DNA from: Kudoa neothunni
Lineage: Eukaryota > Animalia > Cnidaria
Assembly (NCBI GenBank): GCA_964304625.1
Contig: OZ199840.1
Coordinates: forward strand, 6,489,440 to 6,553,439
Direction: 5' to 3'
DNA: 64,000 nt
Shown here: in pieces, positions 9,020 through 51,247 of the stretch
Position numbering within the stretch: position 1 is the stretch's first letter
Layout of the letters: every line of letters starts with the position of its first letter
The notes under the pieces: model-generated
Databases searched by the model: none
Told to the model about the DNA's origin: nothing
Seen by the model: only the letters and a program-made list of their open reading frames with translations
Translations under genes and position numbers: made by a program

Positions 9020-11118
9020 CTTTCACTTGGAAAGAAGAATAAAGAAAAGAATATATAAAAATTATTTAACGACATTTTTACGATTTAATACTATTATTGG
9101 TCATTTATTTGTAAATTTGACCATTTTATTTAGCTTATTTTTCATGTATACATAGAGAGTTTATACATTCTTAAAGTAAAATGTTAATTAACCGAACATA
9201 AGTGTCGCGGATACTAATATAAAAAATGAGACTAGAAAATGTAATTGTAAACCAAATAAAATTTAAGTGTAAAGTTAATCGTAATTAATAGAAAGAGAAT
9301 TACATTAATTCGGTTGAGAATGTAAACGGTTGTATTTTTGAATAAATTTTAATTTCTTGTGGATAATATTAATTGTAAAATTATTATTATTAGTTTATTT
9401 TTAGACGAAAATTACAAGAAATCATGTGGGTTCATGGTGAGATGAACAAACGTATGTTGATCAGCAACATTAAAAATCCAACGACAACAACCGAGAATAG
9501 ATTAACTGGAAAAACTGTTAATAAATTTGTGGTACTGAAAGCATATCACTCCATATTCTTTTTGTGAGAAATAATTTTTGATGTGGTTTTCGAAAAAAAT
9601 GCTCGCAATAAGGCTATTTTGGGGGAGCCACAGGGTATATAATAGCCAAGTGGGTAACGGATCGTGAAACTTAATCTCTTGTGTGCAGCTTGAATTTCTA
9701 ATAGTTATTTTTGTATTTAACAGCTTAACAATTGGCGGAAAAATTAAGTAGAGTACGGTAGGCAACCGATAATACGCACTTTGATCGAAACGACATAGTC
9801 AAAGTTTATATTGGATGAAACGATCTATAATATTTTTTTGATTGTAATAAGATAAAAGTCTTCAAAATATTTTTTCATTAAACTAGTAAATTTCCAGTCT
9901 TTTGTGTCACGTGACTAACCGATAACACGGATTTTTTGGGACAAACCACGTAGATTAAATTATTTTTATTAGAAATGAGGGGAAAATTTTAATTCTGGCG
10001 GTTGAATTTCTGAACGGGCAGGAAACATTTTTTGAGATGTCTATCAAAAAATGATCATTCCCATGAAAATGGAAACAGAATAAATTTTATTTCAAGACAA
10101 TGTTAGTTGCAAATTAAAGAATGTTATAGATGTACATAAATAAAAATTTTCTGGAAAAAATATAAAATAAATTCATATTGCGCTAAAAAATGAATAAGAA
10201 ATAGAATAGTATTTATAATTTTTTAGAACTGACCATTCACCAAATTTTACCCCAATATAAACGGATATAAATATTATATTAATAAATATGATTAAAAAGA
10301 ATTTGCGAATTATTTTTCGCCTAAATAATCTTAGTAATGTTATTTTGTTATTCTAATTAAATAAAGGGTGTAACTATCGATTAAATCGATGTACACAAAA
10401 ATTAGATTATTATAAAAATAGCACAAATTACACTAGATTATCCTATTTGTGTGACGGTTAAAAACTGTGAGTTTTATCAGCGCTAAGTAAATTCGACAGT
10501 AATACCCATTCTGAAAAAATAAAGAAAACACAACAAAAAATGAAACGCGCACGCATTTTAATGCGTATTGTCAGTTGCCTACTGTATTGGCGGAATAGAA
10601 AATACATACATAACTTACAAGCGAAAAGTAGCGGGTTCCAAATTATATATTGCGCACGCGCAATATATAATTTAGGATTAAGTCAGTGGGGGACCATAGA
10701 GACACAGATTGTACGAAATTTACGTTAAGAGAGAATAAACTAAAGGAGCTACAAAAATTAATAGACCAAATATTCTTGACTAACTAAAAATTTCGAAGTG
10801 TTAATATGGACTGAGGCATTCCAACTGGACAATTTAATCCATTATCGCATGTTAAAGTCTATTCGATGATCACATTACCATCTTCGGATCAGTTCTACGA
10901 TTTAAATTTTCTTGCCTGGATTTCTTTACTGAAATTGCTCAAATCATAAAATATCAAAAAATACATAAAACTGACGCCACTTGAATATACACTTGTAACT
11001 GGTGTGAACAGCGTCGCCCAAGGATAAACCATTACATTGCGCAGACGCAATCACACACGTTTGCTTAAATTTTTGACTGGTCCGGTGTCGCGTCCCAGCG
11101 ATTTATCTGCCTCAAATT

Positions 11119-12081
11119 ATGAAACAAAAACTCCTGGAAATATTGAAGAATAGATTTCCAACTGGAGTTGATAGTTCATTTGCATATGGTTCGGCCGTGT
11201 TTGGCCAAAAAGGGGATTCATTATTTAAACGCAATATGATCGATATGGTACTTGTGGTTGATAATCCTCAGCAGTGGCACGCTGAAAACATAGAAAAAAA
11301 TCCACAAGACTATTCACTTATTCGGTATCTGGGCAGTAAAATGGTTTCCTATATTGGAAACGGAACCAGCGTCGGCATTATGTACAACCCAATGGTCAGA
11401 TATAAAGATTTGTCGTTGAAATATGGTGTCATTTCAAAAGGAAAACTCTTGGACGATTTAACCAATTGGAATCATTTTTTCTTGGCTGGACGTCTTCAAA
11501 AGCCAGTGTTGTGGCTGAAAAACTCCACAGTGGTCGATCAAGCCTTACAGCTCAATCTGCAGTATGCATTATGTGTCGCATTGCTTCTGCAACCACAACA
11601 ATTCAAAGAAAAACAACTATATCGTGATCTTTGTTCGTTGTCCTACGATGGTGATGTACGAACATTTTTTGGCATTGATGGCAACAAACCTAGTCGAATT
11701 GTTGATACCAATATGAATCATTTCAGACATTTGTATTTGCCGGTTCTGAATAGATTTTCACACGTGAAATTGGACTTGAAAAGTGGCCAACTTTTCAAAG
11801 ACAGCAAATTCAATAAAGGAATTTTTGAAAAACTACCAAAACCTCTAATTGGATCGTTGCAACAAAATTTCCATGCCAAAGACATGAAGGAATTGTACAA
11901 GATTGAGGCCAACCGATTGAATGAAGCTGTACGCACCACTTTGAGAAGTATCGTCTTCAAAACCACGACAGTAGAGGCGCTTAAGGCCTTTCTCACTACT
12001 AGCTTAATCAAGTCCTTTGTGTACTCCAAAGAAAAATTCAGAAAGTCAGTCCTGTTTAGAAATAGCCATTTGAATGCATGA
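11119..12081 (+). CDS. TAMM41: Mitochondrial phosphatidate cytidylyltransferase (Tam41/Mmp37 family), intronless, 320 aa
   Basis: Family motifs FAYGSAVFGQ, MIDMVLVVDNPQQWHAENIEKNPQDYS, KYGVIS, DDLTNWNHFFLAGRLQKPV and LSYDGDVR in one uninterrupted ORF. Confidence 0.95.
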   Translation: MKQKLLEILKNRFPTGVDSSFAYGSAVFGQKGDSLFKRNMIDMVLVVDNPQQWHAENIEKNPQDYSLIRYLGSKMVSYIGNGTSVGIMYNPMVRYKDLSLKYGVISKGKLLDDLTNWNHFFLAGRLQKPVLWLKNSTVVDQALQLNLQYALCVALLLQPQQFKEKQLYRDLCSLSYDGDVRTFFGIDGNKPSRIVDTNMNHFRHLYLPVLNRFSHVKLDLKSGQLFKDSKFNKGIFEKLPKPLIGSLQQNFHAKDMKELYKIEANRLNEAVRTTLRSIVFKTTTVEALKAFLTTSLIKSFVYSKEKFRKSVLFRNSHLNA

Positions 12082-16571: not shown

Positions 16572-17204
16572 TTACAAATAATTATAAAGGTTGGTGGGGT
16601 TGTTGTAGTAGTTTTCAAATATCAACAAAATTTCGGACACTGTTAGCGATATAAACCCAACCCATGCCAAGGCGTAGCTATAATGGTAGTAGGCCTTGAT
16701 TAAACTGCCGCCAGTATATCCTCCAGTGTAAGTGTAGATACTTACCGACAATAAAGTGCTTAAGGCCGCTAGAAAGTTGAGCAACCTTGCGGTAAATAGA
16801 GGGTATTTTGGCACGTAGCAAAACAAACTAAACATAAATACAATCGTGGCCAGATTGAATATAATTCCGACTATCAGGATTCCTCTCACAGCATTTAACG
16901 TATCTAATGTCCGATAAACATTTAAATATACGCCTGGCAACAAAATATCTCTACCTGGAATCGAATATGAGGGATATGATGTACAATAGCCATCGTAATG
17001 AGCACACCAATACCACAAACCATACACCGTTGTATAGAAGCTATCTCGAACCCATCCTGGCGATATCACTGCTACCATCAAACACACAAACCCCCACACA
17101 CACAATATGATCGATATGATGATTAATAATGGCACAGTCTTTTTTGAAAAACATGGTATCTCTACCACATCCATTTTAGAAGAGGTGTTCAGGTTAGTTT
17201 CCAT
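16572..17204 (-). CDS. Claudin/PMP22/EMP superfamily four-TM protein; probable 51-nt intron at 16904-16954
   Basis: W-GLW-C-C signature (SPGW...YGLWYWC...C), four hydrophobic helices, and YHYSYALAW before TM4. Confidence 0.85.
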   Translation of the reverse strand: METNLNTSSKMDVVEIPCFSKKTVPLLIIISIILCVWGFVCLMVAVISPGWVRDSFYTTVYGLWYWCAHYDGYCTSYPSYSIPGRDILLPGVYLNVYRTLDTLNAVRGILIVGIIFNLATIVFMFSLFCYVPKYPLFTARLLNFLAALSTLLSVSIYTYTGGYTGGSLIKAYYHYSYALAWVGFISLTVSEILLIFENYYNNPTNLYNYL

Positions 17205-19986
17205 GGTGCTGTTATCAAATTTGTCTTTGTTTACACGATTTGACTCCCATAACTAACATTGTTATTGTGACTGTATGACGACACAATAAGATCTCCCACT
17301 TCGTAACAATACAGCGACAATAATGCCGACAAATAGACCACTGCAAAATCGAAATAATTTTGAATCAAATACTACGCATCATATTACTGATAATTACACT
17401 GGTGTTTAATATAACACAATAATATCATGATGAATAATGTGAAGAGTCGGTAAATGTTTTGGGAAATATAATTTCAAAATCAATACTTAAACTGAGATTT
17501 AGTTTAATGTTATGAAGAAGTTATTTACAAATTACAGAGATTTTCTGATTTATAAAAATAACTGAATTCAGGTGAGCATTAAAGTAGAGAAATTAATTGG
17601 CCCTTTTGAACAATAACACCGTTATAGTTGACATTCTGGCGTCTAATAATAACTTTAAACAAACCTTCACTACCAAAAAGCCACATAATTATATTTTACA
17701 GTTTTATAGTTAATTATTATAATTATAAGTTTTATCCGATATTTTTACCCCTGGCGTAATCATCTCGTGAGTAACAACGTTGATAGTTGCATTTGCTTGA
17801 AAAGTAATCATGGGTTGTTTCAAATAAATACTCTCCAGGAAAAACCGGGGCTTGGCAATAATTCTAATATTAAAATATAATGAGCTTTAGCAATTGTTTT
17901 TTTCCACATGGATCCTTAGTGACTGCGAATAATTGTTCGGAAAATGACAATAATTTCAGCCACTGCACTAGATTAGAATTAATATATTGAATTATCCTTT
18001 TATCAATAAAAAATAGATTATTATTTTGTTATTGTTAACTAATAGAATCATGATTGCATAAAGTTTCACTTGCTCCAGACGGTAGGAACTCGAATTGGCT
18101 ATTTTATCTTCGATTCAATAGAATTTTAAGAATAAAGTTTTCTTCGATAAAGGGCAAACTACAATCAAGATTGGATATTGCGTAAATTAAGATTTTCATC
18201 ATGAAAATAATTACATTGGAAATTAATTTTAAATAATTATCAGTATTTCATTTAGAAAATTAGTAATTTACAATAAAAATAAAAAAATATTCTTTCTGTG
18301 TCCCCGACATAGTATTGCGTAAAACCTTTTTATTGCGCAACGAAAAAATCAATATGAATCGATATTGCGTAATTTTTTCTTCAATATATGGAGGAAACAG
18401 TGTGATATTTTCGAGAAAATTAGTATAATACTTTGTTTAACCTCAATAAAAATAATCAAAGATGTCATAAAAATGAAGATAGAAAAATTTATCCTTAATG
18501 GTATGGTTATTTTGGTTATATCTGAATATATATATATATATATACACATATATATATATATTCTAGGACATTCAATGCTGACAGAATTCCTTCTCATGAA
18601 ATCAAGCTGAAAAATTCAGACATTGAAGGAAATAGGAAAGGCATTTAAATAAAAGATTCCTCGGCACAAGTGAAGAAATTTATCAAAAATCGCACCAATG
18701 ATCACATTATTTCTGAAGACTTATTCTCAAAATGTTTATTATCATTGCGAAAAAGAATAAAGTTCAAAATTATAGAGAAAGCAAGGGATGTGTAACAAAG
18801 TTTGAAAAAAATTGGAATCATTTTAAACATTTTCATGGTGAAACTACAAACAGCATTCTTTCATCTATTAATGGATCTATGAAAATAAAAATTTGACAAA
18901 CCCCTATAACCCAAGAGATATAATAAATATTATGATACCGCTATGTATTATGAGCAATTACAGAACAGCAGTTACTTATTAAAGGAAGGAAAGTGACAAA
19001 AAGGATAAAAGCTATCAAAAAAACTTAAAGATTTTGGTATTACACTTTTTATGTGGAGGAAATTTGCCATTATCAATAATTGGAAAATATTGAAATCCTG
19101 GGTGCTTCAAGGAGGTTAAAACATACCCTATGGTCATTGTGCTCCAAAAAATATCTCGATGATTTTGGCTATATTTTTCAGGAAATGAACAAGGTAAATT
19201 CTAAAATGTCGGCAAAGAACATAAAAATGCTAATCTTGCTGAGCCAGCGCCCAGCACATCCAAAAGAAATCTTTTGTTATGGCAATATAAAGATTATTTT
19301 AACTAAAAATACAACAGTTATTTTCCAACAAATCCATCTAGGGATGATTTCAATGTTTTAAAAATAAAAAAATGTGTACTTGTATGATATTATTTTATGA
19401 TTCATCAAATTCTAAATACAATTTACTTGATGCAATTTTAACTCCGAATAGCATGAAACTGCATCACATCAAAAATTATTTTGAACATTTCAAAAAATTC
19501 AATATATTTTATGAAAATAAAAGCTAATGCAAACAGTTAAAATTATATCTATTGTGTTAGGACGGGGAGACGGAAAGAGATGATGAAAGTGGTAAAAAGA
19601 ACAAAATTACAAATCACAACCAAACTTTTAACATTTTTATTATCGATAAAAACAAGGAAAACTACCTATAATGATGGCATGGTTCTTAATCGTGAATATG
19701 AAAATTACAATTTGCACCAACCACAAAATCTCAGTTCAAAGTGAAATAGAATCTGATGATATACAAACAAAGTTTTCGATAAAAGATGTTAGATAGACAG
19801 TAAATATATTAAGAAAAGCATTTATTAAAGAAACTGCATCTTTAACCTTAGTTCTCATATCAATAATGAATCAAATATTTAAATTATCATCTAAAAACGA
19901 CATCAATTAAAAATTATTTCATTTGTTTAAAAAATCGACATTTTTGTTCTTTTTGACTTGAAATAATTTTCTTCTATATAAGATAA

Positions 19987-21088: not shown

Positions 21089-23569
21089 CCTTCTAAGTAA
21101 CATGGGGTGAAAAAAGACCCCAGAGCGATTTAAAACTCGATTTTCTCGAAGTATAAATAATTGCCAAATTTTAAATTTCTACTATTCTCCTAAAATACAA
21201 ACATCTATAAAAAAAATAATAATTAAAGAGATTTTTATATTTTATACTAATATTAAAACAATAAAAATACACCAAATAACATGGGGTGAAAAATGACCCC
21301 AGATTTTTATTTGTTATTTCAATACTACATAATTCAGTAATTCCAAAAATAAAGAAAGACTTAAATTTAAGAGTAGCTTCATGTCGAAAAATGACAAATA
21401 CTTAAAACCAGTCTTAGCGCGCAAGCGCGGAACTTTGTTTTAGTGGCGATGGAGTATTTTTTAGCAAGTAGCGATGATAGCATCGATGAATCTGAACCCG
21501 ATACATTGGATTTGGTATATACAAGGGGGTCTGATAGTGAAGACGTTGAAGATGAATCCATGATTTGCGAATATGTTGATTCCCTCGCTGATAAAAATAA
21601 TAATTTGTGGAGCATCGTGAAACCGAGAAAAACAAAAGATGCAACGGAAAACATGGTCAATTTTAAATAAGGTGTGACTCCATACGCCACTCAAAGAATT
21701 TCTAATATCGCTGGATGTTTTCAACATTTTTTCCCCTTGGAAATAATGAACAAAATCATCGAATTTACCAACCAATATGGAAATACTCATTATGGGAATA
21801 AATGAGAAAACGTTGACGTTGATGAACTAAATGGCTTTACCGGATATATCTTATATATGGCTATCCATAAAGATCGACAACAACCATTAGTTGATTTGTT
21901 TAGTTATGCTGAAGGCAGGCAAATATACAAGGATTTATTTTCTCTGCGAAGATTTAGGCAATTAACCAGAGCGATCCATTTTGATGACACAAACACAAGA
22001 GAGCAGAGAAAATTACTGGATAAATTTTGCTCCATTAGAGAGATCTGGGATATCTGGGTAAATATTGCGAGCAAAAGTTATAATCCAGGGTTTGATGTGT
22101 GTCTTGACGAACAGTTGGTATCCTTTAGAGGTAACTGCTCCTTCAGGCAATATATAGTGAATAAACCTGCGAAATACGGGTTAAAATCTTTTTTACTAGT
22201 AGATCCACAAACTTCATATGTATTAAATATGAATGCATATATTGGTAAAAAATGTTCGACTGATGCCAAAGTTCATGATGTTGGTAAGAATATCGCTCTC
22301 AAATTAACTGAAAATCTAATTGGTTCAGGATGCAATTTGGTTTGCGATAATTATTTTACATCGATTCCTTTGGCTGATGAATTGATCAAAAGAAGAATTA
22401 CCATAATTGGTACAATTCGTAAAAACAAACGAGATATACCACCATTCCTACTATTTAATAGAAGAACCCCGGTGAATGAATCAAAATTTGTTTTCAATGG
22501 AAAGAAAATGTTGGTATCGTTCACTCCAAAGAAAAATAAGAACGTCCTCCTATTGTGTTAATCTAATCATAACACAAAAATTTCTGGAATATTTCCTCAT
22601 AAGCCAGATGTTATCCTACAGTATAATGCTGCTAAAGGAGGCGTTGACACAGTGGACCGTATGTTGGCGTCGGTTTCAGTGAGACGATTCACCAGAAGAT
22701 AGCCGTTAGTTGTGTTTTACAACATGATTGATATCTCACTTGTAAATGCGTTTGTAGTTTACAAGGAGATATTTAACGAACCAAATATTAAAAGAGGAGA
22801 CTTTTTGAAAAAAGTCGCTTTTGAATTATCGGAACCATTAAACATTAGGAAGAACAAAATTCCACAGTTAATAGAACGTACAGGTTCCATAAATCCTCGA
22901 CATTCTGTTGGAAAATATTGCGAAAAAAGATATATCTGGTGTCGTCGAGACAAAGATAAAAAAACGACCATCACATGTGATCTATGTAAGCGTCCATGTT
23001 GCAAAGAACATGCAACTTATTCTTGCAAAGATTGTTCTTTATAGTTATTTATAGCATGAATTTTAATTAGTTTGTCCACAAGATTATATGTTAGTTTATT
23101 ACAGTTGTTCAATTATTTTCTATATATCAGATAATTTTTAAACTTAACTTATTTACTCCTAAACAATGGCATTAAAATAGAAATTATTGAATGAAATGAA
23201 CGTCTGTGTAGTTTGCTGAATCACTTTTAGATTGCCAATTTTACATTATGAAAATAGAAAAATTTATTTTGTTTCAATAAATCATTTATAGTTTATGGAT
23301 TTTTTATATTTTGTAAGGATTTTAGGAGAATTCTACAAACAGTCATTTTAAATTTCGGCAATCGCGCATTATATAGACAATATGCACGTGTGCACATGCG
23401 CGGAAAAATTTAAAACGTGGAAATAATATGGAAAACCTACAAATTTTTCAATTTTATTTAATTTTTAGTTAGTAAATAATCTAAGCATGTGAAATATGCA
23501 AAAACTTTTGGGGTCTTTTTTCACCCCATTGTTACTCGGAAGGTGCCCAATTTTGTGCTACTTAGAAGG
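21089..23569 (+). mobile_element. piggyBac transposon, full length, transposase pseudogenised
   Basis: TTAA TSDs at 21085-21088 and 23570-23573; TIRs CCTTCTAAGTA / TACTTAGAAGG; subterminal GGGGTGAAAAAAGACCCC repeats. Motifs LDEQLVSFRG, KPAKYG, CDNYFTS, GGVDTVD and a C-terminal Cys-rich domain. Four in-frame stops and one frameshift. Confidence 0.95.
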
Positions 23570-25556: not shown

Positions 25557-26569
25557 TAATTATAAAAATATACTTAATATTAAAAGGTATCTTAACGTAT
25601 ATTCCGAGTATATTAATTTAAAGATAAAGATGGCATAAGTTTGAGCTCAGTCGACTCACCGACTTTTGAGGAATATGCGTTAAAATCTCATTTGGGCTCA
25701 AGTGGACCTCAGTTTACATGAAGGGTTCAATAAATCAGCCAACCATATTAACAAGGAAATACAATTTTTGGAAAATTCGTTTGTATAAAGAAAAATTAGT
25801 GATAGATAGATCAGAAAATGGTGAAAAATTTTTCGAATGATTCCAAATAACAACATAAATATTTTTAAAATAATTATCCACGATAATGTTCGAGAGCAGT
25901 AAGTTATTTTGTCACATGGCGTAAAAACATACAACAATTTAAAAAATTAGAATTTATCTATTACAGTTAATGAAAAAAATTATTTTGTTCAAAAACAATT
26001 ATAAAATGACAACATGGAAGCTGCGGGTGATCCTTAATGTGTAAATGACGAATAACGACTTATAAAGGTTTAGAAATTCTTCCTAATCTATGGCTAATTT
26101 TATTATGTCAACAAAATATTTTCACAAAGAATTATAAATTTTACTTAAAAACTTAAGGATTAACAATACTTAATATAATTTTTGCGATGTTGAACGAATA
26201 TCTATTATTTTCGCCGACTTGTTTCTTTATCAATGTAATTTTTCCAAAATTTGCCGAAAAATTCTTTTCGTGGTCATTTTAATCGGACGTTCATTCTAGA
26301 AATATGTTGAAAACCATTAAGTTAATCAATAATTTGATTTCTTTCTACTTATATACGTATATATTTATATTTGTGCACATTAAATCCAAAAATCATTCAA
26401 TTCATGAAAATTTAATCAAATAAAAGGTCAGAATATTGTACTTGAATTGACAAATTCATCATTACGAGAATTCCCGATCTGCGACTTGGTTGTTCAAGGA
26501 GTGGTGTTGTATGTAGAGGATTATTACCGCTTGGAGACTGCGCAAAGGTAAGGTGTGGATATCGCGAAA

Positions 26570-29500
26570 ATGCAACAGCCGAGTGAAACCAATCAACTTT
26601 CTCCTCAAGAAAGTATTAATAGTAAATTTTTCGTACGATATCTTAACGAGCCGATCAGGTAAATCAACCACATCACCTACGAACCATTCAAACAACGAGG
26701 TTAAAGACCAGAATTCACCACCCAACTCTTTTAACACATCAAAACTCGATGAATCGGGTCAAAATTTGAGTGCCCAAAGTATGCTGATAAAATAATTAAA
26801 TGCTACAATTCTTACGAATTAAAGGGCCGAATCTATTTACGTGTGTTTGTTGTAGGAAATCTCTTTGGTGATACTTCCAATCAATCACCAATGAATGGAT
26901 CTGCAGCTTCAGATCTTGGAAAAGTTTCTACCAATTTAGAAAAAACCTCACCAACTTCTTTTCCAAATGATTCCAAAAAACCAGGTTTATTCGACACACC
27001 TCCTACGTGGGATTTGAATGAAAACCCCTCGAATCCAGCAGACCAATCTTTCTCATTTGTTGATATGATAAAGTCTGCAGCTAAAGTTAGTAGTGAGAGT
27101 CCTTTTTCATCCCAAAACAAAGACTCTTTGTTAAAATCGCCTCTCTTCTCCACAACCACCCCAGGTTCGACTCTCTTTTCTGGCTTGGGATCCTCTTCGT
27201 CTGGTTCCAAAGAAAGTGATTCCAACTTGAAAGATATTAAGAAAAGTCCGTTTTCGCCGAAGGATAGCTCCAATCCAACCCCAACTCTTTCAAGCGGCCT
27301 TTTCAGTAACCTTTCTAGCACTGCAATGAATCAGCAATCTACTTCTCTATTTACAGCTAAATCATCTGGTTTGGATCAAGCTCAAGTTGGAAAGGACTCT
27401 TTTCTGTTTTCACCAAATAACAACAGCAATAAGCCTGCTCACAGCCCGTTGATACATGGTGGGAATATCAGTGGAACGTCTCCCATGTCTAGTTTATTAG
27501 GAAATCCTGATAATGGGTCTATTTTGTCATCACTTAATCCGAGTGGATCATCTCCCGCGTTAACTTCTAATAATCAACAACATCCATCCAGTCCGCCAAG
27601 CGCCACTGCTGGAGGCATAACCGGTGAACTACCAAAATCTAGCACCACACGTATTGGAGGAAGTGGCTCTGCTTTGGGCTTTTTGGCCAACATTCCTTTT
27701 GGGACCAAGACCGATAGTAGTCAACCTGTGACTGCACCTTCCACTGACTCGACAGCATTGGGGAAATTGAGTGCATTACGCACTGCTCCTTCAACCTCAC
27801 CTACAAATTCGTCGACATCGTCTGCTCCGCAACAAACTCCTGCATATTTACCGATGACTGGTCTCAATACCAAAACCGCTTCGGCCCCAAGTCCCTTTCC
27901 GCCACGTATACTAATATTTTTGTGTTAGAACCCTTAAACTTTTGTAGAAGAACCAAAACCAAACGGCCCTTTTATACCAACCAACCAATATTTTGGTTTG
28001 ACTATTGACAAGCCCGTGATAGACAGTTCCAGCGAATTCAATTACAAACTTCCAGATTATTTATCTCAACCAAATTCCGATTATGGTATCTTTTCTGTGT
28101 TTAACATCTCGTTTCTTTTTACACTCAATTTTAGTAAAAAATTACGTTGTCCCTAAGGTAGTGTTTGTTGCATCACTAATGTGGATCTGTGTAAATAATG
28201 GAATTTAGTTGGGTTCTGTTGATGAAATAACAAGAAGAGTAGGTCGAAGTTTGTGTTGATTCGAATTGTGATATTCTTTTTAGCTCAAAGTTGCTCACAT
28301 AGAAAACAAAAGTCAACTAGATACGTTGGATTCACTGTCATCGAATATCATTGATTTGGTTCAAAACAAAAACATGTACTACGGATCTGGTCAGTTTAAG
28401 GATATGAATCTGTAAGTTTTGAATTTTATTTTTGACATTAATGTGTTTTCTGAGCGTAGTAAGCCTGAATTGATTCGAGGATTATTTGAAATGGGTTATC
28501 GTATTCCTTCAAGAATCCAAGAAGCAACATTGCCTATAATTGTGAATGAGTAAGTTTTGAATTTCAATTAACTCCGTTCTGTTCATTTGTGCATTAATTA
28601 TGAGATTTGGAAAGCAGCGGAGATCTTATGTCTCATTAGCTTTGTGTGTAAGAATGTATTAAACAATAAAATATTATCATATCCAAATAGCTTAATATTT
28701 TTATCCTTCATAGTTCTGTAGTAAATCTCCGTGATATATTTTTGATTTACAGTTTTTACTTAATACCATGTTTCATTGGGTATGAGTGGGCATGCAATTT
28801 TCGACGCTTTGATGTATAAAGGAGATTATACACAGATCTTTGTATGCGTCTCTATGACGCAAAAATAAAAATTAACATTACATATAATATAATAGCATTA
28901 TGTTTTAATTTCACTATTTTAATATAATTATAAAACCATGGAGATTTTTCCCTTCAAAAGAGATGTTCTCTCGTCCGAAAGAACATGCCTAATTCCCAAT
29001 TAAATTTTATTTGCGAATGAAGACAACGGTTTGTATAACAGATATTATCGGAAAAGTTGGTGTTGCTAAAATCTTTTTTTCAAACAATAAAGGTAAGTGC
29101 TTATCAACAAAACTTATAACATTAGAAAGTGAACTTGCTGTAGGACAATATTTTTAGGGAAGACTTCTAGATGTTGTGTGATTATCTATTATTTTACATG
29201 ATAATCTGCCGTACACTTCAGCTGAAACCAGATAAATCTTTATTTTTTTTATTTTTATGATCTCTAAATAACGAAGGGGGCTAGGAGAGACATGCTTTAA
29301 CGATTCTATCATTCAACGAAGCGTCAATAATGCAAAATGTTTCTGCATACGGTTTTGTTTTGTAGGTAACTTTAACTTGCATTGTTTGTAAACAACTTCA
29401 TTTTAATTTATTTATAAATTAACTCAATCCTCATTAATATTCACCAAATCAAATCGTTTTCTTCCCATTCTTATTAAGGTGCCATTTCCTAAACAACCCA

Positions 29501-32500
29501 AAAAAATAAACGTCGAATCAACCTGAAAAAATCGACAGTATAAATCGAAAATTGCATGCCTTAGGTATAAGATAGGTCTGGTATTATTTGTTACTTTACA
29601 TAGGACTTCATTTTTATGGTATACCTTATTATGCTAAAACAATTATCTTTGGTGGATATTTGTATAAAAAAATTAGTTTTTTTATGAGTTTATCAATTTC
29701 CGCATTGTTTTGTAATAATTTTTTACCAAACTATGCTTATAAAAGACAATTGACATTTTATTATGTATAAATGCCTTTCTTTATGTTCAATTTAATTAAT
29801 ACAAGTGTCTGTTAGTTGTTATAGATTTAATCCCTTTTTGTAATTTAGGTTGTTGTTAATTTTAAAGAATTTATATACTTATCGTTTATAGAGTTAGTTG
29901 CTGTAGTTATGTTCGTGATGTTTAATTAGAATTATTGTTTAACGATAACAAGACATTTATTTTTTCTATAATTTGTTAATGAGTCAGCGATAATTCAATT
30001 TGTCTTATTCTAGGAGTTATTACGGATATCGTCTATAAAAAGGAGTTATCGATGTAAAAATAATGCGTTGCTTGCACAATTCCATTGATGATTAGATTTT
30101 TTTCTTAAGAATAGTCATTGTACAGTCGAGATTGGATGGATATTGAGTAATTTAAGATTTTCATTATGAAACCAATTACATTGGAATTTAATTTCCAATA
30201 ATTATTATTTCATTTAGTAAATTATTAATTTTAACTTGAATTAAAAATATATTTTTTCTGTCCCTGATTTAGTATTGCGTAAAAACATTTTATAACGTAA
30301 TTTTTTCGCGGTCACAAACAATTCGCAATATCGAATCTCGACTGTAATAAGCTTAATAGCATCGTTTTGTTTAGTTTAATAAGACGATAAAACATTTTTT
30401 CTGATGAAATAGCTTTGTTTGATAAATTAGTCGATATTTTGATTTGAATTAGTTAATTAACTATAAATATATTTTTTTAATAAAAATTTACGAATATTGA
30501 TAAAATTGCGATGTAGCAAGAAATCATAATTGCCTAATCTTTATGTTTTTCCTCGAATAACTATTTTCGTATTGAGTAATAAGTTAAATTTTTAAGCCCA
30601 CTTTTCGGTTTTTAGGTTTTGTGATATACGTTAATTACTTAACAGGAGTGTATGTCGGATTTGGGCTGGGAACGCTTTTTTGGTTATATGTGCATTAGAA
30701 TTTTCTCGTTGACCTCCTAATAAAGATAAAAATTTCTAATTTAATAATCAAAATTACAGATAATGATAATGGCATGATATTTTTTCATTGGGAAAATAAC
30801 AGAAGGGCGTATTATATCGTCACATTTGTGTTTCGATATATACTATAAATATGAGTTGGCTTTCTAGAAAAATATTATTTTTACATTTTGTGGAGTCAAT
30901 ACTCACATCACTTACTCCTTCTTTTGATTTATGGAACATGCATTTAATTTTTGGTATAATGATGATTTTAATGATAGTGATTAAATAATAAAAATTATTT
31001 TCTCGAGGTGGTTGTACTTTATTGTATTTTATTTTTATTTGCCAAATATTCAACAATTTTTAAAAATTTATATGAAACTGTTCAAAACGATGGAGTACTA
31101 AATTAAATCAATTTTTATCATACTACACAATTTTTTTGGAAATACACACGAAAAACGAAAGGGATAATTATCTCTCCTCATGTATTTAATATTCGTCAGT
31201 TCTAATCATCCTTGAAGTAATGTACGTCGAAAAGGTTGTTATAAAACGTCGTTTAAAATATTCCAAATCTGTTTGGTAACAAAATGTATATTTATTTATT
31301 TTGACAATAATACCATCTAAATTGATCGTATTTAAACTTAAAAATAAGATAGGATTGAATACCTAATGACGTGTATTTTATAAATTGTTAACTGTATTTT
31401 TATAGTGATAATAAGTTGAATTTTATAATATCCGTGATTTATTGTATTGTATTGGCAGATATTTATTAACGCATGAATTTAAAAATAAGGGCGCTTTATT
31501 GAGATAGCAATATTTGAGCATTAATGTCATATTATAGGAAACGAAATTTGGTTGCTCAGTCGCAAAACGGTACTGGTAAAACTGGTGCATTCGCATTAGC
31601 ACTTTTGTCAAATTTGGAACCCAGTACCAATCATCCTGAGGTAATGGTGTTTTTTGGTATGAGTGATTTGTAATCATTATTTTTGAGGATAGGCTGTTGT
31701 TTTGGCTCCAACCTACGAATTGGCATCTCAAATCAAGTCGGTCATTGACAAAATGGCCAAACATATGCCCGGTATGACTACCATTCTCGGTATAAAAGGA
31801 AATCGATGTAATTTTTTGCTCATCAATTCTGTTTCTGATCGGTTTTTGTCTGTACTTTACTAGTGGCCCCCGGTACAAAAATCACTGACAAAATTGTAAT
31901 CGGTACCCCGGGAACTATTGCTGATTGGATGACCAAATTTAAATTTTTCGACTCTCGTTTTATCAAATTATTTGTTCTCGATGAGGCTGATGTTATGATA
32001 TCACAAGCTGGACATCTTTCCATGTGTTCTAGAATTAAGAGGTAATTTTCGTTTGTCTCACTAGCTTATTGTTGTTGTGATATATTTTGTAGCTCTCTGC
32101 CTAAAAATTGCCAGTCATTATTATTTTCTGCTACCTATCCTGCATCGGTTTGTTCATTTGCCAACTTCAGTGTTCCAAATGCTACTGTGATTCGAGTCAA
32201 ATCTAGCGAACTCACTCTCGACTCAGTCAAACAATACTACACCTACGTTTCCAACCAGAACGAACAATTTGATTTTGCCTGGAATCTTTTCACCACTATT
32301 TGCATTGCGCAATGTATCATCTTCTGCGATGTACGTTCATTGTGACAAATTAAAAATATTGTTTGTTACATCACGAGCTAACAAGTTGGCTAATTTGATT
32401 TTTGATTTAGACGAGAACAGCAGCTAAAAATTTGGCCAGCAAGTTCATTAGTTGTGGTTTCAAAACTTCGGTCATCAGTGGAGAGCAACCTGTCGAAGAA

Positions 32501-32939
32501 CGTGCCGCTGTTATTGAACGCCTTAGGAAGGGCAAAGATAAAGTTCTCATTGCCACCAATGTGGTTGCTCGTGGTATTGATATCAGCACAGTAATTATTG
32601 GTTTTGTTGATTTTATTTTTATGCAAAACAACCCACTACAATAACTAATAGACATCACTTATCATCAATTTTGATATCCCTGTTGAATATAATCACAATC
32701 GCCAATCTAATGACACTGTTCCAAATTTTGAAACCTATTTACATCGCGTTGGTAGGGCTGGACGTTTTGGTGTCAAGGGTATATGTGTTACCGTTGCCAG
32801 ATCCATGCAAGATATCGATTTGTTGGGTCAGATTCAGGCTTATTTCAATCACCAAATTAAACCGATTCACCCGTGGGATGCAGAACAACTGCAAAATCTT
32901 GACCCCATTAAGTATGCTATGGAAGATACGAACAACTAA
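26570..32939 (+). CDS. DDX19: DEAD-box RNA helicase, DDX19/DDX25 (Dbp5) family, ~907 aa, 14 exons, with a long low-complexity N-terminal extension
   Basis: Exons 26570-26612, 26659-26778, 26856-27905, 27948-28085, 28135-28157, 28209-28238, 28284-28411, 28460-28549, 31538-31640, 31693-31807, 31864-32041, 32093-32330, 32411-32590, 32652-32939. All introns are GT-AG; the 2724-nt spliced frame is open. Motifs: GYRIPSRIQE (Q), AQSQNGTGKT, APTYELA, GTPGT, DEAD, SAT, VLIATNVVARGID, PNFETYLHRVGRAGRFG. Confidence 0.88.
30123..30344. mobile_element. pogo-family MITE (222 bp) in DDX19 intron 8
   Basis: TA|CAGTCGAGATT ... AATCTCGACTG|TA. Internal-deletion relative of the element at 18162-23665. Confidence 0.9.
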
Positions 32940-35742: not shown

Positions 35743-38214
35743 ATGATCAGAATAAAAAAAAAGTAGCTTTAATTGTTTTTCGTTATAAATAACGTTAACA
35801 GCTTAGTTTTCCTATTTATATTTGTATTGATCGTGTTGTCATTTTTGTACTACATGAGTGGGGAGAACGATGACAAATATCAAACCGTCACCAACGATAT
35901 TATTTATTCAAATGAAATACCTAAAAATAATAATTCTATCTCAAACAACTTAAAACTCGATAATATAGATCAAGTTATTGCTTCTTAGTGTGTACATCAA
36001 AATTAAAATATTCTTAGAGCACAATTGAAGTTATATCAAGCCGTGATGCATTTAGAGTTTATGTTAATGAAAAAATTATATATGTGTCTCCGATTGGATA
36101 TGTTGGAATATCAATGGTTGTTTTAAATCCAAACTCACTAGAAATTGTAAACACTTCCCATTTCAATACTTACATGAGTTTTTCTGAAGCTGAGGAGTTA
36201 CTGAAGGCTGTCAATGATTGCCAAAATAATGAATTAATTATTCTAGGAGTTGTTGTAAGTTTTTGTCTGAATCAATATATTGTACTCATTATTATATTAT
36301 TTTATCAATAAAATTAAGAAAAAAATATAATATAATATAACTTTATTGTTAAATATGTTGGTTAAAATAGAGTTTTTAATGAAATATAGGATGAGGGATC
36401 ATACAAACTTCACGACAAAGTTAAACTAGAATTATCAAGACAAGGCAGCACCAAAATTAAAGATTTGAAATTTAGAAGTATGTGGTCAATGATATTCCTC
36501 AAGGACCAAGCATTGTTGGAAGAAGGAATAATACACAGGGAGACAACAGACGGCTGGCCTACTCCGCTGCGTCTTTATACTTCACTAAAACCCAAATATA
36601 ATGTTCTCCCAATTCAAAAGATAAATTGCATCAATTGGCCAAACGACAACTCATTCGTTCGGAGAAGAAGATTTTGTGATAAATATCAAAAGGAATTCCC
36701 TGATATTTGCCACTGTGAGGAATTCTTTCCTTTTACTAACATTCATTTCAAATTTCTACGTTAATAATATTATGTGATGTTTTATATAGGTCGAAATTAC
36801 AAACCAATCGATTTTCAGTACAAACCATTAAAGAATTATCAAATTCACTCTTCAATCAAACTTAGAGATGCTAATTCGGTGCTGGATAAGACACCAATTG
36901 CCATTGTGTCTTCCTCTCGCCCCAAATACCTCATGCAATGTCTTCAAAGACTATTATCGATCAGTGGAACACGCAAAAACATGATCAAAATCTACACTGA
37001 TTCTAAAAACCAAATGAATATTGAGATAGCAAAATTATTTGAGATTGATCTTTACTTCACTGCCAAGAGATGTGCACCACCTTGTGCTATCGCATTTGTA
37101 AAAAAGAATCATTCTTTCTCAGTTGATATTTAATAACTAATATTTTCTTATTTTTTAGCATTATAGATCCATGTTTTTGGATATATGCGAACAACACCCC
37201 AGAGCCCCAGAGATTATCATTATTGAAGAAGACCTATTAGTTTCACTAGACTTTTTTTATTATTTTGTTCAAGTGCTTCCATCTTATCGAAAAGTCGACC
37301 ATTATTATTGTGTTTCAGCTTGGAATGATCAGGTGTGAATCCTATCTATATCTAAAATTATAACTGTGCCTTAGTCATATAACCACACAGCTGGAGATTA
37401 TAAAATGTTATATCTCACTCATACGATGCCCGGACTAGGCTTTGCAATCAAGCGCTCCACTTTGGTTAACGACTGGTTACCAACTTGGCCCAAATCTCCT
37501 AAACAATTTGATTGGGATTATTTTGTGAGATCGGATAGAATTCGAAAAGGAAGAGAATGTATAGTGCCTGACATTTCACGAACATTTCATTTCGGAGAAA
37601 AGGGTTATTCCGTAAATTTGATCAGTCAAAAAGTGCATTATAGCACTCGGCCGGCGGTCACTTACCAAGAGACTAATTTTGATATCTCATGGTTGGAAAA
37701 CAATTCATATGAATCTTTGATCATTGATCTTATCAAGTTAATGATTTATAACATTAGATCCAAACATTGGGACAACTATATCAATTTAATTTATCTACTC
37801 TAGGCACGCTAAACCAGTAGAGAGTAGTACACTCACCGAAATTTGTGCTATTGGGAAAACAGCCTTTGATGATTACTATAACTCGAAACTCCATAACAAA
37901 CCCCAAAAGCATGAGCCCTCAGATGGAATAAGCATTGACAAGCTACGCAAAAATACTCGCACGATTTATTTTCAAATGAGTAAAAGTTTTGATCAGAAAT
38001 TATGGAAAAAAGTTTCTATGTAATTAAAAACTATTTCTTCATTTCTATGTTATTTCATAGATGTTGGCACATTTGGACAATGGATGAAAGAGATTTCCAC
38101 TTTGGAGCTCTACGTATTTGGTTTTCGGGGGTTCATTATATAGTAATCATGTGCCCTCTCTCCAAGTATTGTGAATACAAACCAGAAAACCTAACTCCTA
38201 TACCGATAGCTTAA
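35743..38214 (+). CDS. POMGNT1: Protein O-mannose beta-1,2-N-acetylglucosaminyltransferase 1 (GT13), copy A, ~655 aa, 9 exons
   Basis: Exons 35743-35762, 35802-35973, 36018-36254, 36390-36714, 36790-37097, 37159-37332, 37375-37736, 37804-38019, 38061-38214 (1968 nt, open). Type II TM anchor, stem domain (VVLNP...FNTY...DEGS), RRRRFC, IEEDL, CVSAWNDQ, TMPGLG, DWDYF, GRECIVPDISRTFHFG. Confidence 0.92.
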
Positions 38215-43232: not shown

Positions 43233-45434
43233 CCCTCTGATGATCATAAAAAACATGTCCGTTGAAATTACTTTGAGGTAAAAAATACCCCAACTATTTT
43301 TTTCGTTTAAAATACGAAAAATATTATAAAGTTTTCAAAACTAGAATCTAACAAATTTCCAGCCGACAGATTTAGTTTAAACTACACGATAAAGTGATAT
43401 ATTTATCGTTGGCACATGCGCGGGCGATTTGTACGATGAATTCTTTTTTTAGAATGTGAGTGTGGAGGTCATATTTACGAAGATGAAGAATTTTCAGACG
43501 AAATGGAATTAATCGACGTTGGTATTAATGTTCTTACGAGTAAGGTTGGTATTCAATGGAATGCGTCAACTCCTTGTCCAACTAAGAGAGGTTTGAAGAA
43601 TGAATGTATCCACGCCGATGCTCAAACAAAAATAAAAAACATTTTGGGCAGGTTTTTATTATTTTCGATTGATGAAATCAGTAATGAAATCACTTTGTTT
43701 ACAAATATATTTGGAAAACATCGTTTTGGCGACCAATTGTACCATCTTGATTTGTTAGAAATTAGGGAATATTTAGGATTGTTAATCCTCATGACCACCC
43801 ATAAGGATAGAGAGGAGCATATAAGTGAGTTTTTCAGCCAGAAGGAAGGAAGAGAAATCTATCGGCAATTATTTTCAATTCGGTGCTTCAGACATATTTC
43901 CCAAGCACTGCATTTAGATGGCTATTATAACTGCGAAGAACGTAGAAATTTGGACCGACTCAGTGCCATTCGTGATATATGGGAGAAGTGGGTTGACGTG
44001 CTACCTAAATGTTTTGCTCCGAACGAGGACGTCATTGTCGATGAACAATTGGTTCCATTGGGGGGGGGGGATGTCCTTCCGGCATTATATGCCCATGATG
44101 TCGGCAAAATGTGGTATATAATTTTGTCTTCTGGTTGATCCAATCGCCAATTACGTTTGTAATGCCAGCGTTTACTTGGGAAAGAACAATTCTGAGACGA
44201 ACAGATAAACTAACGTAGGTGAAAACATCGTTCTCAACCTTACAACTCATTTGTTTGATTCTGGCCAAAATGTTGTCGCTGATAATTTCTTCTCGTCGAT
44301 GTCTCTCGTGAAGAAATTGTTGGAAAGAAAGTTGACTTTTTTGGGAGCAATGAGAAAAAATAAGAGATACCATCTTGTCTTCTACCTTCAAGAAAATGAC
44401 CTCTTTATTCCATCATTTTTTCGTTTCACAATAAATACATGCTGTTATCGTATGTGGCAAAGAAGGCTAATCTGTGATTCTTCTAACTTCCGGCACACAT
44501 TATAACTCTGTTGCTGGAGAATACCTCAAGTTCAAACCTCAATTAATATTGAATGATAATACAACTAAGGGCGGCGTAGATAATGTCGACAGGATGCACG
44601 CATCGGTTTTTATTCGTCGATTTACAAGGAGATGGCCCCTAGTCGTATTCTTAGCATAGTCGATTTGTCATTGGTGAATGCTTTTGCATTGTATGAAGAA
44701 ATATATGGTGAATCGAATAATGGACGAACCTTCCTAAGGGAGATCGCATAGCAACTCCTTAAACTGTTTAAATTGTTGTTGGCCAAACATTCTACCAATA
44801 TACCGGCAAAAAGACACTTCAATAAAGCAAACATTTCCCATTTGGAACCACCTGTAAACATAAAAAGTGCACGACGTGAGTTTTGTCCTCGAAAAAATGA
44901 TAAAATATTACAAGATGGTGCTATAAGTGCTACAAATTTTATTGTCCAGTACATTCTTCAAGCAGTTTTTTAGATTGTTCAAAATAAATATTCCCTAAAA
45001 TTAATGTTTTTGCGCTGAAAGCTATATTTAATTACTTGGATGAGTCTAACCATAACATATAATTACGACACACAGATTATAGTGAATTATTAATGGAGCA
45101 GATTAAACCACAATTGCCTAGCGTGAAATATGAAAATTTATTTCAGTTGCGCTTATAAAAACATTATATACACGAATTAAAGAGTTTTTAATTTAGTTTA
45201 AATTTTAACGTAAAAGAATGGGTGGGGTAATTTCTACCCCAAAGCACTTTAGAAGATAAACATGCAATAAATTTTTTAATACAAAATATTTAAACAATAT
45301 TTTAGTCTAGAATTAAAAAGAAATGTATGTTACAGGAATGCACAGAATCTTAAGCGCCAAAATTTCCAACATAAAGAGATATATGAATTTTAAAATCGCA
45401 TTGGGGTAGATTCAACCCCCAAATCATCGGAGGG
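43233..45434 (+). mobile_element. piggyBac transposon, decayed; related to the element at 21089
   Basis: TIRs CCCTCTGATGAT / ATCATCGGAGGG flanked by TCAA / TTAA. Remnants VDEQLVP, ADNFFSS, GAMRKNKR and GGVDNVDRM...TRRWPLVVF. Confidence 0.88.
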
Positions 45435-50200: not shown

Positions 50201-51247
50201 TTAAAACTAAAATTCCGACTCATATGAAAAAAGCTGAACTCATACATACCCATACCAGTGGAAGGACCTGGAATCATGTGGCATATTCACTTTATAGGGC
50301 CCTCGCCGTCTACTATAAATGGTAATCGGCTTATAATAATTATGGTCGACCAATTCACAAAATGGGTTGAAGCCAAAGCATTGGAGACAATTACGGCTGA
50401 AAATACCGTTGGAGCTGTATTAGAATTAATTGTATCAAGACATGGTATACCTCAAAGAATTCACACTGATAGAGGTCACCAATTCGACTCTGCAGTTTTT
50501 GGAGAGTTGTGTTCAAACCTAAGCATTAACCACTCCATGTCTACCCCACACCATTCGGAAGGGAACGGAATGGTGGAACGACAAGTTAGAAATCTCAAAA
50601 CAAAATTATGCGCCCCTATTGAATCGAAAAATTTAGAATGGTACAAAGTCTTAGAAATGGCACTTTTCGCCATACGCACAACGATATCGGACTCTATTAA
50701 ATGGTCACCAGCATACCTTACATACGGAAGGTAGTTATACACGAGGGCTCAAATGCAACTTCCTAAAACTTCACCTGGTAAATTAGGCATATGCAACAAT
50801 GCCTACGTCAAATTTTTCTTGGAAAATTTACGCACATGTCGAAGCGAAGCGATGAAGAATGTTGATACGTCTCAAATTAAGCAGAAATCCTATCATGATC
50901 TAAAATCAACAAATATTCATTATAAGATTGGTGATCATGTGTTTATGCGTAATCGAAACGCGACGTCACTGGTCCCTAAATTTGTTGGATCGTATAAACT
51001 GGTTAAAGTATCACATCCCAACTACGTCATAAAAAGTGCAGGACAAAGTCGTCTTGTCCATTTTAATGATTTAACCAAAAGTGAAACTGCCAAACAAGAT
51101 AGTCGCCCTAAATCATCGCGGAGGGGAGAAATGTAACAATACTACGCGTACATTAAACAAGGAGCGGTGGATCTGTTGAGTCACTAATAACCTATATAGT
51201 ATTGAGTAATATTGGTGCATTTATTCAGTGAGTATCTATTCGCTATA
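47212..51247 (+). mobile_element. Ty3/Gypsy LTR retrotransposon (Mag-like), 4036 bp, decayed gag-pol
   Basis: 116-bp LTRs at 47212-47327 and 51132-51247; TSD ACGTT/ACGTC; PBS TGGTGTCAGA (tRNA-Leu-like); polypurine tract GGAGGGGAGAAA. Two zinc knuckles, protease LIDTGS, RT YMDD, RNase H TDH, and integrase HHCC and TDRG in the order PR-RT-RH-IN. Confidence 0.95.

What the first reader, a model, noticed from the sequence alone, without database searches (positions are those of the whole stretch)
26570..28411. Dbp5/DDX19 helicase fused to a ~500-aa nucleoporin-like low-complexity domain
Seen: seven exons upstream of the Q motif splice in phase through short GT-AG introns (42-77 nt) with no stop, placing about 510 aa before the helicase core. 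The region is Ser/Pro/Thr/Gly/Asn-rich with spaced Phe motifs: NLFG, KPGLFD, SFSF, SPFSS, SPLFS, STLFSG, SSGLFS, TSLFT, SFLFS, IPFG, YFG. Known: Dbp5/DDX19 is normally about 480 aa with a short N-terminus, and is recruited to the cytoplasmic face of the nuclear pore by Nup159/NUP214 and Gle1. Inference: this helicase may carry its own degenerate FG-like intrinsically disordered region, allowing self-tethering at the pore or condensate partitioning, possibly compensating for a reduced NUP214. Only three true FG dipeptides are present, so the nucleoporin resemblance is compositional only.
Basis: partly seen in the sequence, partly recalled or inferred. Interest (0 to 1): 0.8.

Follow-up and report, generated by a model that had tools for sequence, protein, structure and literature searches.

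The report
Myxozoan DDX19 with FG-like disordered arm
In a fish-parasitic cnidarian (very probably Kudoa neothunni), the mRNA-export helicase DDX19 carries an extra 400-residue floppy arm with spaced Leu-Phe motifs that may help hold it near the nuclear pore; roundworms have a similar arm, so the design is known and the news is an apparently independent origin.

Summary
The gene model holds: 14 exons, 907 aa, all GT-AG, Q-motif Phe at aa 506. No RNA was available, but an ortholog from a related species (79% core identity) has a Ser/Thr/Gly-rich exon joined by a 37-nt intron in the same place and phase, so arm and helicase are one gene. Correction: the extra arm is exons 1-3, about 404 aa; aa 406-505 are the ordinary DDX19 N-terminus. 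The arm is not an FG domain (2 FG, chance level), but Leu-Phe is enriched in both species (7 vs 1.4; 3 vs 0.7), as in this genome's true xLFG nucleoporin. It is the only DDX19 found; GLE1 is intact. NUP214 and NUP88 were not detected, but the search barely saw NUP62, so loss is not shown. The layout is known: C. elegans DDX-19 (1,022 aa, 21 FG) stays perinuclear without NUP214; filarial and Plasmodium proteins are extended too. Best reading (0.5): a convergent FG-like arm that concentrates the helicase at the pore rim. The scan had not reported this gene elsewhere. New variant of a known kind; interest 0.45.

The parts
26450..26569 (+). Probable 5' leader. GC steps from about 0.22 to 0.42-0.46 at 26450; a strong donor-like site (AAG/GTAAGG) at 26548 could remove the first ATG and move the start to M67.
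   Evidence: GC, ATG list; sequence; inference, no RNA
26570..26612 (+). Exon 1, aa 1-14, first ATG with A at -3
   Evidence: not covered by the ortholog contig
26659..26778 (+). Exon 2, aa 15-54, Ser/Asn/Pro/Thr-rich
   Evidence: not covered by the ortholog contig
26856..27905 (+). Exon 3, aa 55-404: main disordered arm; all seven Leu-Phe motifs lie in aa 57-239; short words SSGLFS and ALGKL are shared with the ortholog
27948..28085 (+). Exon 4, aa 405-450: start of the ordinary-length DDX19 N-terminus
   Evidence: exons 4-5 are 58.5% identical to the ortholog; alignment
28135..28157 (+). Exon 5, 23-nt micro-exon, aa 451-458
   Evidence: contiguous with exon 4 in the ortholog
28209..28238 (+). 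Exon 6, 30 nt, aa 459-468: aligns with the conserved N-terminal helix of animal DDX19
28284..28411 (+). Exon 7, aa 469-510, ends just after the Q-motif Phe (aa 506); internal Met 499 and 509
28460..28549 (+). Exon 8, aa 511-540, rest of the Q motif
28550..31537 (+). Intron 8, 2,988 nt (37 nt in the ortholog); holds a dispersed repeat at about 28788-29574 with at least 39 other copies, 71-83% identical
31538..32939 (+). Exons 9-14 (31538-31640, 31693-31807, 31864-32041, 32093-32330, 32411-32590, 32652-32939): DEAD-box core with motifs I, Ia, Ib, II (DEAD), III (SAT), V and VI intact; stop at 32939

Best explanation
This is the single DDX19/Dbp5 mRNA-export helicase of a Kudoa myxozoan, with an intact core and a normal N-terminal regulatory segment, plus a roughly 400-aa disordered arm gained somewhere on the lineage leading to Kudoa (gene structure shown by DNA comparison; helicase activity inferred from family and motifs). 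The arm most likely works like a degenerate FG domain: spaced Leu-Phe, Ser-Phe and Pro-Phe stickers in Ser/Thr/Pro/Asn spacers make weak hydrophobic contacts with FG nucleoporins or with the export receptor on the emerging mRNP. That raises the helicase's concentration at the cytoplasmic rim of the pore, or in a perinuclear condensate, where GLE1 activates it (inferred). It has no detectable anchoring domain, so it would be a dynamic tether, not a built-in nucleoporin. It is convergent with, not homologous to, the FG arm of nematode DDX-19.
For: Same gene layout in an ortholog at 79% core identity. Leu-Phe enriched in both arms although they do not align (7 vs 1.4, p 0.0004; 3 vs 0.7, p 0.02), and it is the most enriched dipeptide of the arm. 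The genome's true FG nucleoporin is built on xLFG/xLFS (14 LF, 11 FG). Nearest language-model clusters are Nucleoporin_FG (0.76-0.77, lead only). No fold predicted (pLDDT 43, one short helix). GLE1 is intact. Precedent: worm DDX-19 has 21 FG (PMC8311347), sits between pore and P granule (bioRxiv 10.1101/2024.03.25.586584) and keeps its rim location in nup214 nulls (PMC12050070); yeast lives with Dbp5 fused to Nup159 lacking its Dbp5-binding domain (PMC7553267).
Against: FG is not enriched (2 vs 1.2, p 0.35), while the genome still uses real FG elsewhere. The arm has more charge (13% vs 7%) and Pro (11% vs 3%) and far less Gly (7% vs 23%) than that nucleoporin. The Leu-Phe signal was chosen after looking; across some 300 dipeptides it would not survive strict correction in this species alone, and the replication rests on 127 aa. 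No Pfam FG match. Deleting the FG exon of worm DDX-19 added no fertility defect to a triple-FG mutant (PMC12669755). No RNA, localisation or binding data. The single-sequence fold is weak evidence of disorder.
Confidence: 0.5

Rival explanations
1. The arm is a generic regulatory disordered region: a Ser/Thr-Pro phosphorylation platform or a module for entry into cytoplasmic RNA granules or nuage, not tuned to the pore.
For: 22% Ser, 11% Pro, 16 Ser-Pro against 9.4 expected; charge and Gly unlike the genome's FG nucleoporins; worm DDX-19 marks a germ-granule layer rather than the pore itself in adult germ cells.
Against: The repeated Leu-Phe core matches the host genome's nucleoporin motif; the nearest model clusters are FG nucleoporins, not mucins or other Ser-rich proteins.
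Confidence: 0.25
2. The arm stands in for a lost cytoplasmic-filament complex: NUP214, NUP88 and perhaps NUP358 are gone, and FG-type sequence has moved from nucleoporins onto the export factors themselves, possibly by capture of a nucleoporin exon.
For: No match to NUP214 or NUP88 profiles; only one Ran-binding domain found in the genome, where NUP358 normally gives four (the four is my own knowledge). NUP98 has about three FG and many LG/LLG, with its Rae1-binding motif close to the start. An earlier unchecked note reports an FG domain on Rae1 (s1-705183).
Against: The searches are insensitive here: NUP62 scored E 0.66 and NUP54 under its cut-off, and PF13634 missed the known FG exon. Human R259 and D223 equivalents are kept. 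The arm matches no nucleoporin or other sequence in the genome or database. I could not locate Rae1.
Confidence: 0.12
3. The arm is a tolerated, nearly neutral extension of the reading frame.
For: No significant alignment between the two species (p 0.13); worm FG-exon deletion had no added phenotype; Plasmodium has a differently composed extension.
Against: Kept open in two species whose cores differ by 21%, in a genus with short proteins (median 348 aa; PMC12239612); shared short words exceed shuffles (12 vs 3.8 four-mers, p 0.0025); Leu-Phe enriched in both.
Confidence: 0.08
4. The Ser-rich exons are a separate gene, or the main transcript starts downstream (Met 499 in exon 7) and the arm is rarely made.
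For: No RNA evidence; Met 499 is conserved in the ortholog.
Against: Only 42 nt (37 nt in the ortholog) separate exon 3 from exon 4, GT-AG and phase 1 in both; exons 4-7 upstream of Met 499 are 59-68% identical between species; retaining intron 3 gives a stop within a few codons.
Confidence: 0.05

Closest known systems
DDX19/Dbp5 family (human DDX19B 479 aa, yeast Dbp5)
   Same: All DEAD-box motifs; best solved-structure match is DDX19B (E 2e-43 against 1e-20 for eIF4A, ortholog exon); nests with animal DDX19 in the tree (SH-aLRT 95, quick tree); N-terminal helix region kept; GLE1 partner present.
   Different: About 404 extra disordered residues in front; long branch (about 38-44% identity to other DDX19); human I258 and R262 positions are Ser, though position 262 also varies in flatworm and insect.
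Nematode FG-bearing DDX-19 (C. elegans 1,022 aa, 21 FG; filarial 796 aa)
   Same: Long low-complexity, Phe-dotted N-terminal arm on a DDX19 core.
   Different: Nematode arms have true FG enrichment (8 vs 2.4 in the filarial protein); the Kudoa arm has Leu-Phe-Ser instead; no sequence similarity between the arms; a Trichinella model has a short N-terminus. Independent origin is inferred, not tested with free-living cnidarians.
FG domains of nucleoporins (NUP214, NUP62, NUP98, NUP153 type)
   Same: Disordered, Ser/Thr-rich, spaced Phe; shares the xLF core with the xLFG nucleoporin of the same genome.
   Different: FG at chance level, more charge and Pro, less Gly, no coiled coil or other pore anchor, no Pfam match.
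Plasmodium DBP5 (P. gonderi 829 aa)
   Same: Long N-terminal extension with an FG/FS patch.
   Different: Highly charged (38%), Lys/Glu/Asn-rich; unrelated sequence.
Engineered yeast Dbp5-nup159 delta-NTD fusion (PMC7553267)
   Same: Shows that a covalent tie of the helicase to FG-bearing pore material supports export without the Nup159 propeller.
   Different: That fusion has the Nup159 coiled-coil anchor and is stably built into the pore; the Kudoa arm has no anchor.

Membership tests
DDX19/Dbp5 | Intact DEAD-box motifs Q, I, Ia, Ib, II, III, V, VI | tested here: met
DDX19/Dbp5 | Closer to DDX19 than to eIF4A, DDX48 or DDX6 | tested here: met
   solved-structure ranking; tree, SH-aLRT 97 for DDX19/Dbp5 and 95 for the animal group, quick search only; top representative hits are DDX19-type
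DDX19/Dbp5 | N-terminal helix just before the core | tested here: inconclusive
   aa 455-470 align with it in a multiple alignment and are conserved between the two species; exon 7 alone gave no PDB match
DDX19/Dbp5 | NUP214-binding Arg (human R259) | tested here: met
   alignment; role of R259 from PMC5037575
DDX19/Dbp5 | GLE1 activator in the same genome | tested here: met
   PF07817 match E 8e-10, frame continuous across a 48-nt GT-AG intron
DDX19/Dbp5 | RNA- and GLE1-stimulated ATPase that remodels mRNPs | not testable with these tools
   needs biochemistry
Nucleoporin FG domain | FG dipeptides repeated above chance | tested here: not met
   2 in 404 aa against 1.2 expected, p 0.35
Nucleoporin FG domain | Disordered, polar, low-charge spacers with spaced hydrophobic motifs | tested here: inconclusive
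   polar and unfolded in the model, Leu-Phe enriched, but 13% charged and 7% Gly against 7% and 23% in the genome's FG nucleoporin
Nucleoporin FG domain | Attached to a domain that anchors in the pore scaffold | tested here: not met
   no Pfam family and only one 8-residue helix in exon 3
Nucleoporin FG domain | Binds nuclear transport receptors or forms a selective phase | not testable with these tools
   needs assays
Nematode-type FG-DDX-19 | Long low-complexity arm in front of a DDX19 core | tested here: met
Nematode-type FG-DDX-19 | FG repeats in the arm; arm homologous to the nematode one | tested here: not met
Nematode-type FG-DDX-19 | Perinuclear granule localisation | not testable with these tools
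   needs imaging

The most novel reading that the evidence does not exclude
Kudoa has lost the NUP214-NUP88 (and NUP358) cytoplasmic filaments and has moved FG-type sequence from nucleoporins onto the mobile export factors (DDX19, perhaps Rae1), while NUP98 has traded FG for LG. It would be an animal that ends mRNA export with a self-tethering helicase instead of a docking nucleoporin.
Probability: 0.12. Interest if true: 0.8.

Novelty: new variant of a known kind. Interest (0 to 1): 0.45.

Why it matters
A second animal lineage apparently putting a Phe-sticker arm on DDX19 suggests the worm arrangement is a recurring solution for holding the export helicase at the pore rim. It also gives a natural test of whether Leu-Phe-Ser motifs can do the job of FG. 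If a proper proteome search confirms that NUP214 and NUP88 are missing, Kudoa would be a natural counterpart of the engineered yeast Dbp5-Nup159 fusion and a model of a minimal animal pore. If NUP214 is present, this is a modest lineage-specific extension.

Tried and rejected
RNA support: three raw metatranscriptome runs gave zero reads, so no test; X3 covers introns and is DNA. Exon 3 found no homolog in the 5.8-billion set, in Pfam or elsewhere in its genome. No second DDX19: exon 14 and an insect DDX19 found only this locus plus other DEAD-box genes. No myxozoan DDX19 outside the one ortholog turned up; the length limits of the word search keep full-length kin out of reach of single-exon queries, so this says nothing about other myxozoans. 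Rae1: three DNA patterns and one protein query found BUB3 or nothing. FG-pattern scans were swamped by chance matches. PF13634 missed a known FG exon, so profile negatives for FG proteins are uninformative. Sphaerospora molnari was considered as the source and rejected (40.17 Mb in 40 contigs). The run SRR33849685 is named in no held paper. Napetschnig 2009 and Sheth 2010 are not held. My first two scripts misplaced exon 5; one search is the final model. As the operators required, the spliced protein was never sent to a search tool: remote searches were exon by exon by reference, and the joined search and a full-length fold were left out. The joined model was used only inside local scripts against files already fetched.

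Full report
Source. The window is G000:C3:6489440-6553439 of a 40,260,978-base assembly in 4 contigs, about 30% GC. This fits the published Kudoa neothunni assembly from yellowfin tuna: 40.2 Mb, three chromosomes plus a mitochondrion, 30.4% GC, intron length 49 nt, too little parasite RNA for annotation (PMC12239612). The name came as a lead from earlier scan notes; I checked it only by these statistics. S. molnari (40 contigs) does not fit.

Observation. Fourteen exons between 26570 and 32939 splice through GT-AG introns into 907 codons without a stop. The seven introns before exon 8 are 42-77 nt, as stated. The Q-motif Phe is aa 506 and motifs I to VI are intact. Exon 3 sits in a 391-codon open frame; 350 stop-free codons have a chance of 2e-8 at that composition, and its codon use favours this frame over the two shifted ones, with third-position GC 0.33 against 0.36 in the core. 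Phase agreement across the small exons proves little alone, since 1,489 stop-free chains exist under lax rules. No RNA test was possible: three raw RNA runs laid no read, and the fourth run is DNA.

Ortholog. A search with exon 14 found one close relative, 72% identical, on a 2,404-base DNA contig from run SRR33849685 (species not identified, presumably another Kudoa). It splices through nine 33-39-nt GT-AG introns, all at positions shared with the window's gene, into a stop-free frame. It begins inside a Ser/Thr/Gly-rich exon (127 aa before the contig ends) that joins the exon-4 equivalent by a 37-nt phase-1 intron, matching intron 3. The 23-nt exon 5 is contiguous with exon 4 there, and intron 8 is 37 nt rather than 2,988; in the window that intron holds a dispersed repeat. 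Identity is 79% in the core, 68% in exons 6-7, 59% in exons 4-5 and about 21% in the arm, where the best local alignment is no better than shuffles (p 0.13) but shared four-letter words exceed them (12 vs 3.8, p 0.0025; SSGLFS, ALGKL). Arm and helicase are therefore one gene in two species. Exons 1-2 and the true start remain unverified; a donor-like site at 26548 could move the start to M67.

Size of the addition. Against other DDX19s, aa 455-470 fall on the conserved N-terminal helix, and ordinary-length proteins start near aa 400-410. The added part is exons 1-3, about 404 aa, not 510.

Nature of the arm. It is 22% Ser, 11% Pro, 10% Thr, 8% Asn, 7% Gly, 13% charged. A single-sequence fold of exon 3 gives pLDDT 43 and one 8-residue helix (weak evidence without an alignment). 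FG is at chance level (2 vs 1.2). Leu-Phe is the most enriched dipeptide (7 vs 1.4, p 0.0004, chosen after looking) and recurs in the ortholog's unalignable arm (3 vs 0.7, p 0.02). A true FG exon in the same genome, about 4 kb upstream of a NUP62-like coiled coil and probably the same gene, has 14 LF, 11 FG and 5 FS. So the arm shares the xLF core but mostly ends it in Ser, and has much less Gly and more Pro and charge. The nearest language-model clusters are Nucleoporin_FG at 0.76-0.77, under the tool's 0.9 line and with a low recognition value, so a lead only. No homolog of exon 3 was found.

Family and partners. The core ranks DDX19B first among solved structures and nests with animal DDX19 in a quick tree (SH-aLRT 95). 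No second copy was seen. GLE1 is intact. Human D223 and R259 equivalents are kept; R259A is known to lose NUP214 binding (PMC5037575). I258 and R262 positions are Ser, but 262 also varies in other animals; their interface role is from my memory. NUP214 and NUP88 profiles found nothing and only one Ran-binding domain was found. These negatives are weak: NUP62 scored E 0.66, NUP54 and NXF1 fell under their cut-offs, and the FG profile missed the known FG exon. NUP98 is present with about three FG, 19 LG in 345 aa and a degenerate Rae1-binding motif near its start, which agrees with note s1-712041. The Rae1-FG note (s1-705183) I could not check.

Precedent. The single large search (exon 12) returned extended DDX19s from a filarial nematode (796 aa) and Plasmodium gonderi (829 aa), both with FG enrichment and no similarity to the Kudoa arm. 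C. elegans DDX-19 is 1,022 aa with 21 FG (PMC8311347), defines a granule layer between pore and P granule (bioRxiv 10.1101/2024.03.25.586584) and keeps its rim location in nup214 nulls (PMC12050070); deleting its FG exon added no fertility defect to a triple-FG mutant (PMC12669755). In yeast, Dbp5 fused to Nup159 lacking its N-terminal domain supports life (PMC7553267). The normal recruitment by NUP214, GLE1 and NUP42 is reviewed in PMC13242641. I found no paper on myxozoan nucleoporins.

Mechanism. Shown: one gene, intact core, conserved ordinary N-terminus, a fast-evolving arm that keeps Phe stickers. Inferred: the arm works like a degenerate FG domain that concentrates the helicase at the cytoplasmic pore rim or a perinuclear condensate (0.5). 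Rivals: generic regulatory or granule-entry region (0.25), replacement of lost cytoplasmic filaments (0.12), near-neutral extension (0.08), wrong model (0.05). It is a DDX19 family member; it is not a member of the FG-domain class, since FG repetition and a pore anchor were tested and not met.

Limits. The spliced protein was not searched or folded as a whole; remote searches were exon by exon by reference. Other myxozoans and free-living cnidarians were not reached, so the age of the arm and its independence from the nematode one are inferred.

Verdict. Real and correctly described apart from the arm's length; a new variant of a known design. Interest 0.45, rising to about 0.8 only if loss of NUP214/NUP88 and transfer of FG-type sequence to export factors are confirmed (probability about 0.12).

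Noticed in passing
L005:3140-4700 (G000:C1 about 12800100-12801700): NUP98 has about three FG, 19 LG and 11 LL[GSQ] in its repeat region; a degenerate Rae1-binding motif lies near the apparent start, so the first FG segment seems to be missing.
   Followed up: partly
L040:8183-9658 minus and L040:3690-4149 minus (G000:C1 10912200-10918200): A 470-aa exon with 11 FG in 25/37-residue xLFG repeats lies about 4 kb upstream of a NUP62-like coiled coil; probably NUP62. Shows that true FG is still used in this genome.
   Followed up: partly
G000:C1:12109921-12110250: Only one Ran-binding domain was found in the genome; NUP358/RanBP2 may be lost or too diverged for the search.
   Followed up: no
window 28788-29574: Dispersed non-coding repeat of about 785 bp inside intron 8, at least 39 other copies at 71-83% identity.
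   Followed up: partly
window 35770-37800, 52540-52830 and 58050-59470: Duplicated glycosyltransferase genes with ILEI and GNT-I matches (POMGNT1-like); the two long copies are nearly identical in the GNT-I part.
   Followed up: no
window 47588-51133: LTR-retrotransposon-like element (reverse transcriptase and integrase matches) broken into several frames; described only.
   Followed up: no
window 21395-23041 and 43440-44957: Two piggyBac-like transposase remnants (DDE_Tnp_1_7).
   Followed up: no
window 11077-12078 and 16575-17252: Single-exon TAM41 gene and a claudin-family gene.
   Followed up: no
L025:5170-7935 minus (G000:C2 about 8736200-8738900): BUB3-like gene, found while looking for Rae1.
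   Followed up: partly
L008 against the window gene: Introns 4 and 11 of the window gene are absent from the ortholog, whose introns are all 33-39 nt.
   Followed up: no
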